64,000 nt of DNA, from sequence record KT919973.1; one strand, 5' to 3'. Position numbers and translations under genes: made by a program. Of this stretch, positions 56,762 to 62,644 are shown in pieces. Positions within the stretch are counted from its first letter, which is position 1, and every line of letters begins with the position of its first letter. The notes under the pieces were generated by a model. It was not told where the DNA came from. It ran no database searches and saw nothing but the letters and a program-made list of their open reading frames with translations.

Positions 56762-57458
56762 AAAATCAATTCTCGTGGCGGTTACAGTCGCAGTACTTGC
56801 AGGTTGTGGTGAAAGACCACAACTCGAAACGAAGAAAGATAAAAAATTCACTACGGTAAATGCAGTTGTGAATAAAAAAGAGCGTGAAATGATCAACTAC
56901 TGGCTGGCAGATGCTGACGCTAGTAACTATTTGTATAACCCATTGTGGACTGCTCTTGCCACTCGTAACAAATACGGTACTAATGCAGTGCGACGTTCAG
57001 ACGATGAAATCCCTTTCTGTGATGTGATTGCATCACTTGTCGAAGCCGAAGACGACATTCGCAGTACATACGAACGCACGATGAGTAACCAGTGGCGAAC
57101 GCAGTATGGTATTAGTTTGAGTGAGCAATGTAATTACGATGCTCCTGAATCTCTAGAAGAGAAAGCACAGCGCGTTGAAAAACTTGAAATGCAAGCTGAG
57201 TTAAATCAGCGTGAACAAAACGCATTGTCTGGTAATATCAACAATATGGATGATGTTCAAGACGCGACAATCGAGCTGTTAGACCCGCATGAGTATGACT
57301 ATCTCATTGAATCTGCACGCGACTGCAATCGAGCTAAAACAAAGTTACTTGAGCTAACACAAGCAGGTAAACCATTAACACAAGCTGACGGGTCTGAAGC
57401 GCGTAAGTTGATAATCGAATGCAAAATGCATAAACTTGAAGTTGAATTGAATAAGTGA
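56757..57458 (+). CDS. Lipoprotein, paralog of 62981-63700
   Basis: Lipobox LAGC; shared PFCDVI, SNQW..YGI.L.EQCN and DCNRAK motifs. Confidence 0.8.
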   Translation: MKKSILVAVTVAVLAGCGERPQLETKKDKKFTTVNAVVNKKEREMINYWLADADASNYLYNPLWTALATRNKYGTNAVRRSDDEIPFCDVIASLVEAEDDIRSTYERTMSNQWRTQYGISLSEQCNYDAPESLEEKAQRVEKLEMQAELNQREQNALSGNINNMDDVQDATIELLDPHEYDYLIESARDCNRAKTKLLELTQAGKPLTQADGSEARKLIIECKMHKLEVELNK

Positions 57459-57465
57459 GAAAAAC

Positions 57466-58236
57466 ATGTTAAGAACGAATATCGCAATTGAAGATCTAAA
57501 GATCAAAATGCACCCATTCGACCGAGTGGCAAATTCAGCGAATGATGAAAGTTCAGTTCGTGAATGGCGTCAATGCCCTGAAGTTATGAACGAAAATATC
57601 TTGAAGAACTCAGTACTACCGTCATGGGTTATTCGTGAATTTCACTGGCGTGATTATGCATTCAATCAACCGTCAATTAGCAATCTACCAGTCGAATATA
57701 AAACTGAAAGTGGTGAAGTTGGTCGATGTCAATCACACTATCTCGGCGAGCTTGATTCGTGTAAGTCATGGCGCCCTGATCTATCTTCGTTAAACGCTCA
57801 GTACATTGACGCAACAGACGTAGATAAAGCATTGTGCGAGTTACAAGCCATTGATGTATTTTCACCGTCTGAGGGGTTTGAAGAAGGTCGAACTGAACCT
57901 ATTAACAACACTCATCATGGCATTACCGATCTTGAGCTTGAAGAAGCACTTGTCGAAGCTGAACTAGAATCAGCCATTGAAACAAGTCAGCAAATTTCTG
58001 ACGTAGAACATGTTTATTACATGGACGAAAAGTATTATATTATAGGTGATGATCCGTTCGATGATGATTACTGTTATGCATTGTCTAATAGTAAGCATCC
58101 GCAGAGAATTGCAAAATCACAGATTGTAACAGCAGAACAGTACAAAGAAGCTGAAGTGTTGTCACATCAATTCCCTAGAATGTTTAAACCACAAGACTAC
58201 GCCAAGCTTGTAAAATACATTCGTGAAAACGGTTAA
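57466..58236 (+). CDS. Hypothetical acidic protein
   Basis: 256-aa ORF. Confidence 0.7.
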   Translation: MLRTNIAIEDLKIKMHPFDRVANSANDESSVREWRQCPEVMNENILKNSVLPSWVIREFHWRDYAFNQPSISNLPVEYKTESGEVGRCQSHYLGELDSCKSWRPDLSSLNAQYIDATDVDKALCELQAIDVFSPSEGFEEGRTEPINNTHHGITDLELEEALVEAELESAIETSQQISDVEHVYYMDEKYYIIGDDPFDDDYCYALSNSKHPQRIAKSQIVTAEQYKEAEVLSHQFPRMFKPQDYAKLVKYIRENG

Positions 58237-58241
58237 TCATG

Positions 58242-58249
58242 TATAAATA
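58242..58249 (+). promoter_or_regulatory. T4-type late promoter
   Basis: Exact TATAAATA, 35 bp before ATG 58277; AAAGGA RBS. Confidence 0.85.
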
Positions 58250-58276
58250 CGATTTTAACATGAAAGGAATAACATA

Positions 58277-58810
58277 ATGGGATTACCATCAACTGGTCCA
58301 ATATCACTTAATGATGTTCGAATCGAGTTGGACAGACCTAGCGGGGCTATCTCGCTAGGTGATGCAGATGTGCGCGACCTAGCAGAGAGACCTAGCGGGT
58401 CGATATCAATGGGAGATCTTAGAGGTAAATCTGCATTCTCGCATACTATAGTTCGAGGGTTGTTATATCGTTTTGGTGAACCTCGTTCTTCTGGTTGGGG
58501 TTATGCGAAAAATAGTCCGAACTTCGAAAACGCAGGTTCGTTGACTCCTACTACTATTGGTGGTAGAAGTGTAACTGACATAGCATATAGCGAAGACCAA
58601 ATATCGACTGAATCGTTCATTGCATTGTCTTCTGATCTGACACAATCAACACTACGAGTTACAACTGAAAGTGGTACTGTGTTTATATTCAGTCATCGCT
58701 CGCCGTCAAAGCGTTTTTACGAGTTGACATCTAACAATGAATCACAATGGAAGAGTTTCTTATCGACTGCGGTAGGGTCTTCGGCTAAAATTAACATCGA
58801 ATATTATTAA
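58277..58810 (+). CDS. Late virion protein with tail-fibre-adhesin-like N-terminal attachment motif
   Basis: MGLPSTGPISLNDVRIEL...ISLGDADVRDLA..PSGSISMGDLRGKS. Confidence 0.55.
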   Translation: MGLPSTGPISLNDVRIELDRPSGAISLGDADVRDLAERPSGSISMGDLRGKSAFSHTIVRGLLYRFGEPRSSGWGYAKNSPNFENAGSLTPTTIGGRSVTDIAYSEDQISTESFIALSSDLTQSTLRVTTESGTVFIFSHRSPSKRFYELTSNNESQWKSFLSTAVGSSAKINIEYY

Positions 58811-58817
58811 AAAAAGC

Positions 58818-58846
58818 TTGCAATGTGAGAAAAAGAATAATATAAT
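58818..58846 (+). promoter_or_regulatory. Early promoter
   Basis: TTGCAA-17-TATAAT. Confidence 0.8.
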
Positions 58847-58873
58847 GTATTCATTCAATAAGAGGAAGACATT

Positions 58874-59377
58874 ATGAAAAAACTTACTGCACTATCACTA
58901 TTGCTTTTATCTAGCGTTGCAAGCGCAAATGCATCTACTAACGAACAGACTACGTTCATTGACGATGTTCAGGTTCGATTAGGTGGATGGTCTTATCACC
59001 TTTCAGGTGACGGATATTGTCCTGATTTAGCAGATAAATGTAAAACGTCTGTTTTTAAAGAGTACAATGAAACAAACAATGCAATTGGTGTTAGATATAA
59101 AAATTGGGAAGTTATGACTTTAGAAAACAGCTTCTATGAGCGTAGTTTTGTTGCAGGTTATCACTTCACATACACACCAAGTAAAGAAATTGACTATGAT
59201 TTATTTCTTGGTCTAGCGACTGGTTATACTGAAGTTTATGATCTCGGTATTCTACCTGCGATTCAGCCATCAGTTACTTATTGGGCTACTGATAACTTAG
59301 GTGCAGAGCTTGGGTTGTTGATGGGTTCTGATATCTGGGTGCCAGTCGTAACTATGTCATTTAAAGCTCGTTTTTAA
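58874..59377 (+). CDS. Outer-membrane beta-barrel, PagP-like
   Basis: Signal peptide; WSYH...YNETNNAIG...ENSF...GLATGY; alternating strands; C-terminal Phe (VTMSFKARF). Confidence 0.65.
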   Translation: MKKLTALSLLLLSSVASANASTNEQTTFIDDVQVRLGGWSYHLSGDGYCPDLADKCKTSVFKEYNETNNAIGVRYKNWEVMTLENSFYERSFVAGYHFTYTPSKEIDYDLFLGLATGYTEVYDLGILPAIQPSVTYWATDNLGAELGLLMGSDIWVPVVTMSFKARF

Positions 59378-59434
59378 TGGCACTTACACTCGAACATTCG
59401 AGAAACTTTAACAGCATAAAATGGGAGCCATACA

Positions 59435-60928
59435 ATGCTTAATCTTAATCAAAATATCGCAATCGCAACAGACAGCTACAAAGTTTCACACTGGTCTCAA
59501 TTCCCTCGTGGTTTAGAGTACAGTCAATATTACGTTGAAAGCCGGGGCGGCAAGTTCGACAAAATTATGATCGATGGTATGGCATACATGTGTCGTATTC
59601 TCGAAAAAGGTGTTGCAATGAACGATGTCAAGCGTGCGAAACGTCTGTTCAAAAAGCACTTCGGTTCTGAAGTCTTCAATGACAAGGGTTGGGAAATCAT
59701 CGTTAACGAACTGAACGGCAAACTGCCTATTAAGATTCGTGCGGTAAAAGAAGGTACTGTAGTACCAGTTAAGCACCCTATCTTGACGATTGAGAACACA
59801 GATCCACGTTTCGGTTGGCTACCTGGTTATCTTGAAACGTTTATCTTACGTGCGATTTGGTACCCGACAACTGTAGCAACGATCTCGTTCGAAGTGAAGA
59901 AAATCATTCGTGAATTCATGAAGAAAACGGTTGATGATGAACGCATTGCAGAACAAGAGCCGTTTAAACTTCACGACTTCGGTTCTCGTGGTGTGTCAAG
60001 TGGCGAATCAGCAGCTATTGGCGGCGCAGCTCACTTGAAAAACTTCTTGGGAACTGACAATGTAGAAGCACTTGTTGCAGTTGAAGAGCTTTACGCTGAA
60101 GATGTTGAAGACTTCATTGCGGGATTCTCTATCCCTGCACGTGAACATTCAACAACTACAATCTACAAAGAATTTGGCGAAGATCAAGCATTCTTGAACT
60201 CTATCGAGCAATGGGGCGCAGCTCTATACGCTTGTGTAATGGACAGCTACGACTACGAAGCAGCAATGAATCGTGTCTCAACTGGTCGTTTCAAAGAGCT
60301 AATCATCAGTAAAGGCGGTACGTTTGTTGCTCGTCCTGACTCTGGTGTACCAGTAGATGTAGTAATGAAAGGTCTTGAGATTCTTGGTAAGAACGTTGGT
60401 TACACAATCAACAGCAAGGGTTACAAAGTTCTACACCCTAGTTACCGTATCATTCAAGGCGACGGCGTGAACATCGAAGAAATTCGTCGAATTCTATCTT
60501 ACATGGAAAGTAAAGGTTGGTCGGCAGAAAACATTGCATTCGGTATGGGTGGTGGTTTGCTTCAGCAACTTGACCGTGATACTCAACGTTTTGCAATGAA
60601 AATGTCAGCGGCGATCATCAACGGCGAATACGTTAGTGTGTTCAAAATGCCGAAGACTGACCCAACAAAAGCATCAAAAGCAGGTTTCTTAGATTTGATT
60701 GCAGTCGATGCAGAAAATCCGAACCCAGCAGCTCGTGGTTACGTGACGTTCTCTACTGAAGATTACGACACTCGCGTACACCCGAAAAGCGTGATGCAGA
60801 CAATCTTCGAAGACGGTGTAACAGTTGCTGACTTCTCACTTGAAGAAGCTCGTAAACTGTCTGACGTGCAAGCTGATTTTATCAACGAAGGTGAATGGAA
60901 AATCGCCAAGAAGATTCGAACAGCGTAA
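59435..60928 (+). CDS. nadV: Nicotinamide phosphoribosyltransferase
   Basis: ATDSYKVSH, LHDFGSRG, SIPAREHS, VARPDSG, IIQGDG, AFGMGGGLLQ, RDTQRFAMK. Confidence 0.97.
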   Translation: MLNLNQNIAIATDSYKVSHWSQFPRGLEYSQYYVESRGGKFDKIMIDGMAYMCRILEKGVAMNDVKRAKRLFKKHFGSEVFNDKGWEIIVNELNGKLPIKIRAVKEGTVVPVKHPILTIENTDPRFGWLPGYLETFILRAIWYPTTVATISFEVKKIIREFMKKTVDDERIAEQEPFKLHDFGSRGVSSGESAAIGGAAHLKNFLGTDNVEALVAVEELYAEDVEDFIAGFSIPAREHSTTTIYKEFGEDQAFLNSIEQWGAALYACVMDSYDYEAAMNRVSTGRFKELIISKGGTFVARPDSGVPVDVVMKGLEILGKNVGYTINSKGYKVLHPSYRIIQGDGVNIEEIRRILSYMESKGWSAENIAFGMGGGLLQQLDRDTQRFAMKMSAAIINGEYVSVFKMPKTDPTKASKAGFLDLIAVDAENPNPAARGYVTFSTEDYDTRVHPKSVMQTIFEDGVTVADFSLEEARKLSDVQADFINEGEWKIAKKIRTA

Positions 60929-60930
60929 AA

Positions 60931-60946
60931 CGTGACATTGATCACT
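60931..60946. promoter_or_regulatory. Near-consensus CRP site
   Basis: CGTGA-CATTGA-TCACT flanked by A-tracts; centre about -62.5 from predicted +1 (61001). Confidence 0.55.
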
Positions 60947-60962
60947 AAAAATCGTAAATTTA

Positions 60963-61038
60963 GGGTTGCTTCGGCAACCCTTTTTTTGTATTATATCTAC
61001 ATCGAAACGGGATACGAAAACAAAGAGAGAACATTATG
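60963..61038 (+). promoter_or_regulatory. Terminator/promoter cassette
   Basis: GGGTTGC-TTCG-GCAACCC-T7; TTGCTT-17-TATTAT; ATCGAAACG at 61001. Confidence 0.9.
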
Positions 61039-62644
61039 CAACTAACTACTAACATGACTAAAGCTCAAAAAACTAAAGTTGTTGAAGGTTTCAACTTCGA
61101 GCGCGAAACAAATCAAGGTCAATATAAGTTTCGTAACGGTTCTTATGCTATGGAAGGTTCAGATGTCGCTCGTCGATTCAATCTAATTTCAACTATCGTG
61201 ACTGGTAAGCCAGCTATTATCGCTGAAGCGACAGTTGCTGATTTCGACCGCATTATTCTTATGCAAACAATGACAGATCAATTCTTAACAATGAGTGCAG
61301 GTGCTGCTTCTCTTGAAGAATCTAACGAATTTGGTAAAAAGGTGCTTGCACACTTCGCTTAATTCAATTAGAATACTTACATCAACTTAAAATCGCTCAA
61401 ATGGAGACAACATAATGGGTTCATTCAACACAACTTGCGCAATCTCACGTACACCTATTCTAGAAGGTCAGAAAGCGCGTGTGTTCTTCTTAGTCATGGA
61501 CACGTTTGATCAGCATTACAACTTACGCTCGAAATCGCTCTACAGCAATGTTCTAATGGGAAGTAAATGTTACCCGTGGGATACGTTTAAAGTCATTGGT
61601 TACCCGCTTCTAGCTAAGTATGCTGACTACAACAATTATGAATTCGAAGACGCTGATATGGAATCGTTGACGCTCAAGGCGATTAACAACATTTATATGC
61701 CGAATCGTGTTCCAGAAGGGAAGTCGCTTGACGACTACAACGAATATCACGATTACATGGAAATTGATGAAATCGAAGATATGAATCAACTTCAAGACAT
61801 GGAACATAGCGGTGCGTTGCGTGTGAAAACGTGTCACGGCGTTAGTCTGATTGCGAAAATGGCAATTCACGAAGAGATTTATCAGCAAATGATTCTCGAT
61901 GGTACGTATACTACGGGTTGGGGTGAAGACGCGAATACATACACGTTTACAGAAGAAGTTGACGAATTTGTAGCGAAATATTCAAAATCTACATCTGATC
62001 TTGAAATGATTTCAGCTCGTGGTAGACTTCAAATCGAACGTGCGCGTATTGAACTTGAAAAAGACGATACGAAAACAGAAGATGAGAAGAAAGAAATCAT
62101 TGATAGTTTAATCGAACTGCAAGTTGACATGGTTAAATTTGATACGCAGTTCGAACGCTCAGAATGGTTGACTGAAACTCACCCGATTGTTGACATGAAA
62201 GAAAACGATTTCGGTCAAAAGATTGCTGAAGCATATATCGGTGGTAAATGGACGTCTCGCTTCTTCTTGGCGAATAACCTTGAATTTATGCCTGCTATGA
62301 CTTCTGGTCAATGTCACGACATGTGCGCGGACGCTGAACGTCTTCGTAAAATGGCAGACATCATCGAAGATCTACAACCAGATTGGTATTTTGAAGAATC
62401 AGTTCAACTCAAAGTCGAGCGTACAACTCGTCTGACTCTACGCCGCGAAGACCTGCACGAGAAGTTCAGCGAATGGTATGACGAAGATGACCAAGAATAT
62501 CAAGATTATCTTGCTGCCGTTGAATACATGAATGAACAAAGCAGCTTCACAGTCGGTGATAAGAACTGTAAAATGGCTCAATTCATCGAAGAATACGATG
62601 TGCTACGTGATGTAGACGACGGTCAAGTAATTAATTTCAACTAA
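61036..62644 (+). other. Hypothetical CDSs: 61036-61362, 61415-62644 (MGSFNTTCAIS conserved-looking start)
   Basis: ORF track and RBSs. Confidence 0.75.

What the first reader, a model, noticed from the sequence alone, without database searches (positions are those of the whole stretch)
58818..59377. Phage-encoded PagP-like outer-membrane beta-barrel
Seen: early promoter, signal peptide, amphipathic strands, terminal Phe (BAM signal), and W-S-Y-H...YNE.N..IG...E-N-S. Known: PagP has H33 and D76-S77 in the same arrangement (WH...YNE.PWG.G...DS) and acylates lipid A; here Asp is replaced by Asn. Inference: the phage may remodel host LPS or the outer membrane (superinfection exclusion, envelope stabilisation, altered immunogenicity), or the barrel is a non-catalytic plug.
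Basis: partly seen in the sequence, partly recalled or inferred. Interest (0 to 1): 0.7.

Follow-up and report, generated by a model that had tools for sequence, protein, structure and literature searches.

The report
Phage outer-membrane barrel distantly PagP-like
A Vibrio phage carries a small secreted outer-membrane barrel protein that is a distant, altered relative of the bacterial lipid A-modifying enzyme PagP; the label already exists in databases, and its activity has never been shown.

Summary
The window is Vibrio phage phi-ST2, bases 1-64000. The finding is a real gene, 58874..59377 (+), 167 aa. It has a promoter-like site, a ribosome-binding site, a Sec signal peptide and a C-terminal Phe. 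With a 121-sequence alignment AlphaFold gives a confident 8-stranded barrel (pLDDT 88.5). Its best natural match in the PDB by TM-score is PagP (TM 0.54/0.57).

No curated model (Pfam, NCBIfam) and no PDB sequence matches the protein. Homology to PagP is remote:
- PagP is the only Pfam family hit repeatedly by relatives, 5 of 121, best 19.8 bits against a cut-off of 24.
- hhalign gives E = 0.002.
- These alignments place PagP's His33 and Ser77 on invariant H42 and S86. Asp76 falls on an Asn found in 120 of 121 relatives.
- PagP's N-terminal helix is missing.

The family is large: 1435 cluster representatives. It is mostly phage-borne, with a few chromosomal Vibrio copies. KVP40 lacks the gene.

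RefSeq and PHROG 3600 already call this protein PagP, so the idea is not new. I think it is most likely an outer-leaflet lipid acyl enzyme. Its substrate and its role in infection are inferred only.

The parts
58818..58846 (+). Sigma-70-like promoter-like site (TTGCAA, 17 nt, TATAAT)
   Evidence: 10 of 12 matches, one of the two best sites in 57300-61200. The upstream spacer is identical in ValKK3 and phi-Grn1. Function and timing are not shown.
58860..58868 (+). Ribosome-binding site (purine-rich, GAGG at 58862-58865, 8 nt before the ATG)
   Evidence: Read from the sequence.
58874..59377 (+). Coding sequence of the PagP-like barrel, 167 aa plus stop (phiST2_0131)
   Evidence: PHROG 3600 at E = 4.6e-50. 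98-100% identical protein in 11 phage records.
58874..58933 (+). Sec signal peptide, residues 1-20, predicted cleavage after A-N-A
   Evidence: Read. Modelled as a helix at 2-16, followed by a low-confidence linker.
58934..59374 (+). Mature protein: short disordered N-terminus (residues 21-31), then an 8-stranded barrel (strands 32-42, 67-75, 78-84, 90-100, 106-116, 126-137, 142-150, 158-166)
   Evidence: pLDDT 88.5, pTM 0.76. Foldseek matches to 8-stranded outer-membrane barrels.
58982..58999 (+). Motif G37-G38-W39-S40-Y41-H42 at the extracellular end of strand 1. H42 aligns with PagP His33.
   Evidence: alignments. H 121/121, S 113 plus T 8, G37 116/121.
59006..59059 (+). Loop 1 insertion specific to this clade, with a cysteine pair (C49, C56)
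   Evidence: Alignment. Lower model confidence here. A disulfide is inferred only.
59066..59071 (+). N65-E66 before strand 2. Aligns with the invariant Asn-Glu of PagP.
   Evidence: N 120/121, E 87/121; invariant in PagP.
59126..59131 (+). N85-S86 at the top of strand 3. Aligns with PagP Asp76-Ser77.
   Evidence: N 120/121 and never Asp; S 116 plus T 5.
59222..59227 (+). G117-Y118 at the top of strand 5. Invariant in the family and not shared with PagP.
   Evidence: 121/121 for each..
59435..60928 (+). nadV (nicotinamide phosphoribosyltransferase), next gene on the same strand, probably co-transcribed
   Evidence: No terminator-like site lies between the two genes.
60962..60981 (+). Terminator-like hairpin (8 pairs, 5 G-C) followed by a T run, the likely end of the transcription unit

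Best explanation
The gene encodes a small enzyme-like outer-membrane protein of the PagP superfamily that the phage makes in the infected Vibrio cell. Shown by computation: the gene is intact and conserved; it has a signal peptide and a C-terminal aromatic residue; it folds as an 8-stranded barrel; and its invariant polar residues (S40, H42, N65, N85, S86, Y118) all lie at strand ends on the extracellular side. Inferred: the gene is transcribed from its own sigma-70-like promoter together with nadV. The protein is exported by Sec, cleaved after residue 20 and inserted into the outer membrane by BAM. There its conserved residues face the LPS leaflet and carry out acyl chemistry on outer-leaflet lipids. 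By analogy with PagP, that would mean taking an acyl chain from a phospholipid that has strayed into the outer leaflet and passing it to lipid A or another acceptor. The Asn in place of PagP's Asp and the extra invariant residues suggest altered chemistry or a different substrate. The likely benefit is remodelling the surface of the infected or lysogenic cell. That could reseal a perturbed outer membrane until lysis, or make the cell and its debris poorer targets for further phage. My estimates: outer-membrane barrel about 0.95; true PagP relative about 0.7; active lipid enzyme about 0.55; lipid A palmitoylation specifically about 0.25.
For: Confident 8-strand model. Among natural proteins PagP 3gp6 gives the best TM-score, 0.54/0.57, at E = 9.4e-4. 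PagP is the only Pfam family hit by more than one of 121 relatives: 5 hits, best 19.8 and 18.4 bits, collinear over about 70-95 residues. One of 11 phage homologues also hits it. hhalign of the family against a PagP alignment gives E = 0.002. The family HMM scores PagP proteins at up to 17 bits. All of these alignments put His on His, Ser on Ser, Asn-Glu on Asn-Glu and Asn on Asp. These residues are invariant across 121 relatives that share only 21-41% identity with the window protein, which points to a catalytic site rather than a passive barrel. Residues of strands 2 and 8 on the inward-facing parity are small or hydrophobic in the outer half and charged or polar in the inner half, with parity set from PagP's terminal Phe facing lipid (PMC5519381). 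This resembles PagP's interior pocket but is inferred from sequence pattern only. PHROG 3600 and RefSeq carry the same label.
Against: No curated PagP model reaches its cut-off for this protein or any relative. The family profile finds no PagP chain in the PDB at E <= 10. hhalign probability is only 13.9% (53), and my column-shuffle control did not separate the real score from noise. The Asp that PagP needs is never present. The N-terminal amphipathic helix is absent. The residue aligned with PagP's pocket-floor Gly88 is not Gly. TM-scores near 0.55 are also reached by designed 8-strand barrels, so the fold alone does not single out PagP. No activity, localisation or expression data exist.
Confidence: 0.55

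Rival explanations
1. It is a lipid hydrolase rather than an acyltransferase. A Ser-His pair on one strand (S40-x-H42) together with an invariant Asn (N65 or N85) would form an OMPLA- or PagL-style Ser-His-Asn site on a PagP-like scaffold. It would cleave acyl chains from outer-leaflet phospholipid or lipid A, for surface remodelling or to weaken the outer membrane late in infection.
For: S/T40 and H42 are two residues apart on strand 1, so their side chains point the same way, and both are invariant. Asn, never Asp, is invariant at two positions. From my own knowledge, OMPLA uses a Ser-His-Asn triad with His and Ser on one strand, and PagP itself has a slow phospholipase activity. In two lambdoid-type contexts the gene lies between the NinG or antiterminator region and the terminase genes, where lysis genes often sit.
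Against: No relative matches a PagL or phospholipase A1 Pfam model (top 25 families by recurrence), and neither fold is in the top 50 structural matches. The neighbouring genes in those contexts match no lysis family. In this phage the gene sits in a block of small same-strand genes behind a sigma-70-like promoter, not among late genes. PagP also has a Thr two residues before its His, so the S-x-H pair may simply be inherited.
Confidence: 0.2
2. It is a non-catalytic outer-membrane barrel, a structural or blocking protein in the manner of lambda Lom or the Ail/OmpX family. It would act by occupying or masking the surface, for example by interfering with a receptor such as OmpK to exclude other phages.
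For: Phage-encoded 8-stranded barrels without enzymatic activity are known (lambda Lom; my own knowledge). Ail and OmpA barrels are among the structural matches. PagP's Asp and helix are missing. The gene is accessory: it is present in the phi-ST2/VH7D/ValKK3 clade and absent from KVP40.
Against: Seven polar or Gly/Tyr positions are invariant across relatives that are otherwise only about 30% identical, and they sit at strand ends rather than in the long loops that binding proteins use. The extracellular loops are short and variable in most members. No Ail/Lom or OmpX model is matched. Ail TM-scores (0.37-0.45) are lower than PagP's.
Confidence: 0.15
3. It is a small channel or uptake barrel (OmpW- or AlkL-like) for a hydrophobic or metabolic substrate, linked to the neighbouring NAD-salvage gene.
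For: It is adjacent to, and probably co-transcribed with, nadV. In an unrelated 137-kb Vibrio phage a family member lies within 2.5 kb of PRPP synthetase and a nicotinate phosphoribosyltransferase-family gene. AlkL is among the structural matches at TM 0.46.
Against: In most other contexts no NAD gene is nearby. Eight-stranded barrels of this size have no open pore. OmpW-type models are not matched.
Confidence: 0.05

Closest known systems
PagP, the lipid A palmitoyltransferase of Enterobacterales (Pfam PF07017; PDB 1THQ, 3GP6)
   Same: Sec-exported 8-stranded outer-membrane barrel ending in Phe. Best natural structural match by TM-score. Collinear motifs: a hydroxyl residue, one residue, then His on strand 1; Asn-Glu before strand 2; Phe/Lys, then Asp or Asn, then Ser and an aromatic at the top of strand 3; Gly-Tyr in strand 4; prolines in strand 6. 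The conserved residues lie on the extracellular side.
   Different: Below the Pfam cut-off. Invariant Asn where PagP has the essential Asp76. No N-terminal amphipathic helix. About 40 residues shorter in typical members. Gly-Gly where PagP has Pro28. No Gly at the Gly88 position. Its own invariant Gly-Tyr (117-118) and a mostly His position 68 that PagP lacks. Carried mainly by phages.
PHROG 3600 and the RefSeq 'PagP' proteins of Vibrio phages VH7D, ValKK3 and pVco-5
   Same: This is the same family. The VH7D protein is 100% identical and the ValKK3 protein 99.4% identical to the window protein. PHROG 3600 matches at E = 4.6e-50.
   Different: Nothing differs in sequence. The name is an annotation carried over from weak similarity, not a tested function. 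The GenBank record of phi-ST2 itself says 'hypothetical protein'.
PagP-like morons noted in other phages (Burkholderia phage CSP3 orf72; V. coralliilyticus temperate phages Satoshi, Kolob and Ushijima)
   Same: Phage-borne genes annotated as PagP-like and discussed as possible modifiers of host lipid A.
   Different: Those phages are temperate, and the gene is discussed there as a lysogenic-conversion factor. Here the carrier is a large T4-like phage (Straboviridae, Schizotequatrovirus). I did not compare those sequences with this one.
Lambda Lom and the Ail/OmpX family
   Same: Phage-encoded or related small 8-stranded outer-membrane barrels. Ail appears among the structural matches.
   Different: No sequence-model match. 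Lower TM-scores (0.37-0.45). Those proteins act through long extracellular loops and have no conserved catalytic-type residues.
The divergent Pseudomonas aeruginosa PagP (PA1343; Thaipisuttikul et al. 2014, cited in PMC7916210)
   Same: By its title and citing papers, a lipid A palmitoyltransferase that diverges from enterobacterial PagP. It is a precedent for active PagP-type enzymes that standard models miss.
   Different: Not compared. I could not fetch its sequence or the paper, so I do not know whether this family is closer to it than to E. coli PagP.

Membership tests
PagP (PF07017 and the NCBIfam PagP models) | Match to the curated family model above its cut-off | tested here: not met
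   The window protein has no Pfam hit at E <= 1 and no NCBIfam hit at E <= 10. The best relatives score 19.8 and 18.4 bits against a cut-off of 24.
PagP | Eight-stranded antiparallel beta-barrel of the outer membrane | tested here: met
   Eight strands, pLDDT 88.5, pTM 0.76. Foldseek match to PagP 3gp6: TM 0.54/0.57, rmsd 4.8 A over 151 columns.
PagP | Sec signal peptide and C-terminal aromatic beta-signal | tested here: met
   Residues 1-20 have the shape of a signal peptide. Terminal Phe; Phe in 76 of 121 relatives, otherwise L/I/Y/W; alternating hydrophobic residues in strand 8. No dedicated predictor was run.
PagP | Catalytic His33 (precursor H58) | tested here: met
   Aligned to H42 by hhalign and by hmmsearch. 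H42 is present in 121 of 121 relatives. A plain MAFFT alignment shifts this by two residues.
PagP | Catalytic Asp76 (precursor D101) | tested here: not met
   The aligned residue is N85: Asn in 120 of 121 relatives, Thr in one, never Asp.
PagP | Catalytic Ser77 (precursor S102) | tested here: met
   Aligned to S86: Ser in 116 and Thr in 5 of 121 relatives.
PagP | N-terminal amphipathic helix before strand 1 | tested here: not met
   Residues 21-31 are non-helical and low-confidence in the model. In most relatives the strand 1 motif begins 2-8 residues after the signal peptide.
PagP | Interior acyl-chain pocket ('hydrocarbon ruler') with Gly88 at its floor | tested here: inconclusive
   The residue aligned with Gly88 is H97, and N/D/S/K in relatives, so the Gly is not kept. 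The inward-facing pattern of strands 2 and 8 is apolar in the outer half. The pocket itself cannot be judged without model coordinates.
PagP | Proline-interrupted strands that give lipids lateral access (strands A/B and F/G) | tested here: inconclusive
   P128 (88/121) and P132 (95/121) in strand 6 align with PagP's proline-rich strand. The Pro28 position holds Gly37-Gly38. A strand 7 proline is common in relatives (89/121) but is Ala in the window protein.
PagP | Transfer of palmitate from phospholipid to lipid A | not testable with these tools
   No biochemical data were found for any family member.
PHROG 3600 (phage proteins labelled PagP) | Match to the PHROG profile | tested here: met
   E = 4.6e-50, 171.5 bits, residues 1-167 on profile positions 158-309 of 315.
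OMPLA / PagL type outer-membrane lipid hydrolases | Sequence or fold match, and a Ser-His-(Asn/Glu) site with His and Ser on one strand | tested here: not met
   Neither model is among the 25 families most often matched by 121 relatives, and neither fold is in the top 50 PDB matches. An S-x-H pair and invariant Asn residues are present, but their geometry could not be checked.
Ail / Lom / OmpX barrels | Match to the family model; function carried by long extracellular loops | tested here: not met
   No Pfam match. TM 0.37-0.45 to Ail. Loops are short in most relatives.

The most novel reading that the evidence does not exclude
This is not a PagP orthologue. It is the founding example of a separate, large, mainly phage-borne class of outer-membrane lipid enzymes, with 1435 sequence clusters. 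The class is built on the PagP scaffold but has its own invariant residues: Ser/Thr-x-His, two Asn, Ser and Gly-Tyr. Lytic and temperate phages of marine bacteria would use it to edit outer-leaflet lipids during infection. That would be a lipid-level counterpart to O-antigen-modifying conversion genes, serving superinfection exclusion, protection of progeny from cell debris and vesicles, or control of outer-membrane integrity before lysis.
Probability: 0.2. Interest if true: 0.7.

Novelty: new variant of a known kind. Interest (0 to 1): 0.4.

Why it matters
If the protein is active, phages of several families that infect Vibrio would be rewriting the lipid layer of the host surface during infection. 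Fold matches suggest the same for phages of Aeromonas and other marine bacteria. The outer membrane is where phage adsorption, antimicrobial peptides and host immunity act, and little is known about how lytic phages alter its lipids. The invariant Asn at the place of PagP's essential Asp also bears on PagP's still unclear catalytic mechanism. For annotation, the point is practical: the name 'antimicrobial peptide resistance and lipid A acylation protein PagP' is now spreading through Vibrio phage records, and into discussions of virulence, on similarity that falls below every curated threshold. It should read 'PagP-like' until it is tested.

Tried and rejected
- Direct sequence searches with the window protein found nothing: Pfam, NCBIfam, PDB and PADLOC. 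PDB profile searches with 11 and 121 relatives found no PagP.
- The word-indexed protein search with the single sequence found only one near-identical protein.
- The first structure model, from an 18-sequence alignment, was poor (pLDDT 65). Its Foldseek matches were not usable, so I replaced it with the 121-sequence model.
- My column-shuffle control for hhalign gave erratic scores (mean 15, sd 12, one at 133) and is uninformative. The reversed-profile control scored 16.5 against 27.2 for the real alignment.
A narrow one worked.
- I considered a lysis-cassette role because of the gene's position in two lambdoid contexts. The neighbouring genes match no lysis family.
- I looked for signs of recent foreign origin. 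The gene's GC content is 37.3% against 40.7% for the window, which is unremarkable.
- Purifying selection could not be measured within the clade because there are too few differences: 6 and 10 nucleotide changes.
- Papers on PagP's catalytic residues and on the Pseudomonas PagP could not be retrieved. The roles of His33, Asp76, Ser77, Gly88 and the prolines therefore rest on my own knowledge of Hwang et al. 2002 and Ahn et al. 2004.
I also recalled a T4 middle-promoter box while reasoning. The result (3 matches, 3.2 expected by chance) is given no weight in any conclusion.

Full report
**What the window is.** Bases 58277-60928 are 100% identical, at the same coordinates, to Vibrio phage phi-ST2 (KT919973.1). 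This is a 250-kb T4-like phage of Vibrio alginolyticus (Straboviridae, Schizotequatrovirus). The finding covers one annotated gene, phiST2_0131, 'hypothetical protein', at 58874..59377 on the + strand, plus 56 bases upstream of it.

**Checking the observation.**
- The finding's first base, 58818, begins the best sigma-70-like site in the region: TTGCAA, 17 nt, TATAAT, 10 of 12 matches. Such sites are no more frequent here than in shuffled sequence (11 found, 8.7 expected), so timing is not established. The 63-nt spacer that carries the site is identical in ValKK3 and phi-Grn1.
- A GAGG ribosome-binding site lies 8 nt before the ATG.
- Residues 1-20 have the shape of a Sec signal peptide, with A-N-A before S21.
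- The protein ends in Phe.
- H42 and N85-S86 are there.
- No terminator-like site separates the gene from nadV. A strong hairpin follows nadV at 60962-60981, so the two genes probably form one transcription unit.

**Is the gene real and conserved?** Eleven phage records of the phi-ST2/VH7D/ValKK3/phi-Grn1 clade encode a protein 98-100% identical to it. KVP40 and its closest relatives do not. Their similarity to phi-ST2 begins 22 nt before the nadV start codon, and the sequence upstream of that point is unrelated. The gene is therefore accessory within this phage genus.

tblastn finds weaker homologues (29-37% identity) in 134 further Vibrio phage records of quite different genome sizes, 40 to 200 kb. 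In these the gene usually sits among small genes of unknown function.

An exhaustive profile search of 1.84 billion cluster representatives found 1435 proteins at E <= 0.001 and 324 at E <= 1e-10. Nearly all of the 150 listed are 120-200 aa long. Most begin with a signal peptide followed at once by a Gly-Gly-Trp-Ser-x-His type motif, and most end in an aromatic or aliphatic residue.

Of the five contexts I looked up by exact protein sequence:
- three are phage or prophage;
- one is an element carrying an integrase and ParB genes;
- one is a Hahella region of unclear nature.

A genome scan added copies in Vibrio mediterranei and V. barjaei. These lie in ordinary chromosomal surroundings: a TetR regulator, dehydrogenases and an amino-acid ABC transporter. 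They are 37% identical to the window protein. The family is thus mainly, but not only, phage-borne.

Structure matches in the viral library extend it to phages of Aeromonas, Cellulophaga and Salinibacter.

**Fold.** A shallow 18-sequence alignment gave a poor model (pLDDT 65). With 121 diverse relatives the model is confident: pLDDT 88.5, pTM 0.76. It shows eight strands at 32-42, 67-75, 78-84, 90-100, 106-116, 126-137, 142-150 and 158-166.

Foldseek against the PDB returns outer-membrane barrels. By TM-score the best natural protein is PagP (3gp6; 0.54/0.57; E = 9.4e-4). Next come the OprF N-terminal barrel (0.47/0.56) and Ail (up to 0.45). OmpA has a slightly lower E-value but a poor TM-score. 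Designed 8-strand barrels reach 0.58/0.78. The fold is established. On its own it does not prove PagP ancestry.

**Relation to PagP.**

Negative results:
- The window protein matches no Pfam, NCBIfam or PDB sequence.
- The family profile does not find PagP among PDB sequences at E <= 10.

Positive results:
- When 121 relatives are scanned one by one against all 24,736 Pfam models, PagP is the only family matched more than once. There are five matches. The best are 19.8 and 18.4 bits against a cut-off of 24, and they are collinear over most of the barrel.
- I fetched E. coli K-12 pagP from NC_000913.3, an accession shown by papers. I then aligned 25 enterobacterial PagP proteins. hhalign of family against PagP gives E = 0.002 at 13.9% probability.
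- A family HMM scores PagP proteins at up to 17 bits, and a PagP HMM scores family members at up to 14 bits.

What makes these weak scores persuasive is that hhalign and both hmmsearch directions give the same residue correspondences:

| PagP (mature numbering) | PagP (precursor numbering) | Window protein |
|---|---|---|
| His33 | H58 | H42 |
| Asp76-Ser77 | D101-S102 | N85-S86 |
| Asn-Glu, invariant in PagP | N72-E73 | N65-E66 |
| Gly-Tyr | G111-Y112 | G95-Y96 |
| proline-rich sixth strand | - | P128 and P132 |

A plain MAFFT alignment shifts the His by two residues, so this one correspondence is not beyond doubt.

The matched family positions are essentially invariant across 121 relatives that share only 21-41% identity with the window protein:
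- H42: 121/121
- N65: 120/121
- N85: 120/121, never Asp
- S86: Ser 116, Thr 5
- S40: Ser 113, Thr 8
- G117 and Y118: 121/121 each

By the strand topology of the model, all of them lie at the extracellular ends of strands. That is the side where PagP's active site faces the LPS leaflet (my own knowledge of Hwang et al. 2002 and Ahn et al. 2004; I could not retrieve these papers).

**Differences from PagP.**
- The Asp is replaced by Asn throughout the family.
- There is no N-terminal amphipathic helix.
- Typical members are about 40 residues shorter than PagP.
- The position of PagP's Pro28 holds Gly-Gly.
- The position of the pocket-floor Gly88 holds polar residues.
- The family has its own invariant Gly-Tyr at 117-118, and a mostly His position 68, which is Asn in the window's clade.
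- The window's clade also carries a loop 1 insertion with two cysteines.

It is not a family feature.

**How it most likely works.** Shown: the gene, its conservation, the fold, the placement of the invariant residues and the remote PagP signal.

Inferred: transcription with nadV from the sigma-70-like site; Sec export and cleavage after residue 20; BAM insertion; and acyl chemistry on outer-leaflet lipids at the extracellular rim.

The terminal Phe of PagP faces lipid (PMC5519381). Taking this as the parity reference, the inward-facing residues of strands 8 and 2 are small or apolar in the outer half and charged or polar in the inner half. This resembles PagP's interior acyl pocket. I could not verify it in three dimensions because model coordinates are not exposed.

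I rate the options as follows:
- PagP-like lipid acyl enzyme: 0.55
- hydrolase using a Ser-His-Asn arrangement: 0.2
- non-catalytic barrel: 0.15
- transport role linked to NAD salvage: 0.05

The biological purpose is inference only. The candidates are resealing a perturbed outer membrane, masking the surface against further phage, or conversion of lysogens in the temperate carriers.

**What is already known.** RefSeq names the identical VH7D protein, and the ValKK3 and pVco-5 homologues, 'antimicrobial peptide resistance and lipid A acylation protein PagP'. PHROG 3600 carries the same label. A 2026 preprint discusses such genes in V. coralliilyticus temperate phages as candidate virulence factors, and it says explicitly that activity is unproven. 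A Burkholderia phage paper lists a PagP-like moron. I found no experimental test of any phage PagP-like protein.

The finding is therefore a correct reading of an existing but weakly founded annotation. What this analysis adds:
- the family is large;
- it falls below all curated PagP thresholds;
- it keeps the His and Ser positions but has an invariant Asn;
- it lacks the helix.

Noticed in passing
window 58277-58810 (+): The upstream gene (177 aa, phrog_26817, function unknown) opens with three tandem copies of a roughly 16-residue motif of the form Pro-Ser-Gly-x-Ile-Ser-Leu/Met-x-Asp. Its first 53 residues also match the start of another PHROG of unknown function, phrog_26746. In phi-Grn1 this gene is annotated with a later start.
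   Followed up: no
window 59413 (breakpoint), compared with L012 (KVP40 134692-143207): Similarity between phi-ST2 and KVP40 starts 22 nt before nadV. Upstream of that point KVP40 has a different small gene, gene 30.2 and radical-SAM genes on the other strand. phi-ST2 instead has a long run of small same-strand genes. This is a rearrangement or replacement boundary inside the genus.
   Followed up: partly
L021 5872-6339 and L022 (Vibrio mediterranei, V. barjaei chromosomes): Chromosomal family members lie outside any recognisable prophage, next to an amino-acid ABC transporter operon. They have Thr instead of Ser before the His, and a charged N-terminal extension of about 20 residues that might be a helix. 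The Hahella copy also lies about 600 bp from a family-3 solute-binding protein gene.
   Followed up: partly
L001 (MT135025.1, Vibrio phage V07, 349 kb, 'UNVERIFIED_ORG'): The V07 homologue sits in a gene order almost identical to that of the 50-kb phage vB_ValC_WD615 (L002). This suggests the 349-kb record joins a KVP40-like genome to an unrelated smaller phage.
   Followed up: no
L008 (Vibrio phage 496E54-1) 2426-5330: In a 137-kb phage a family member lies just after rIIA and rIIB-like genes. It is within 2.5 kb of a ribose-phosphate diphosphokinase and a nicotinate phosphoribosyltransferase-family gene, echoing the nadV neighbourhood in phi-ST2.
   Followed up: no
L020 2062-3501 (phi-Grn1): The nadV orthologue of phi-Grn1 is annotated as 'bifunctional NMN adenylyltransferase/nudix hydrolase'. 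The 98%-identical region in the other records is called nicotinamide phosphoribosyltransferase, so this is probably a mislabel.
   Followed up: no
family alignment A5, column of window residue 127: A cysteine directly before the conserved strand 6 proline is present in 49 of 121 relatives (Leu in the window protein). An unpaired Cys is unusual for an outer-membrane barrel.
   Followed up: no
window 59408-59436 (+): A second 10-of-12 promoter-like site overlaps the nadV start codon. It is therefore unlikely to serve nadV.
   Followed up: no
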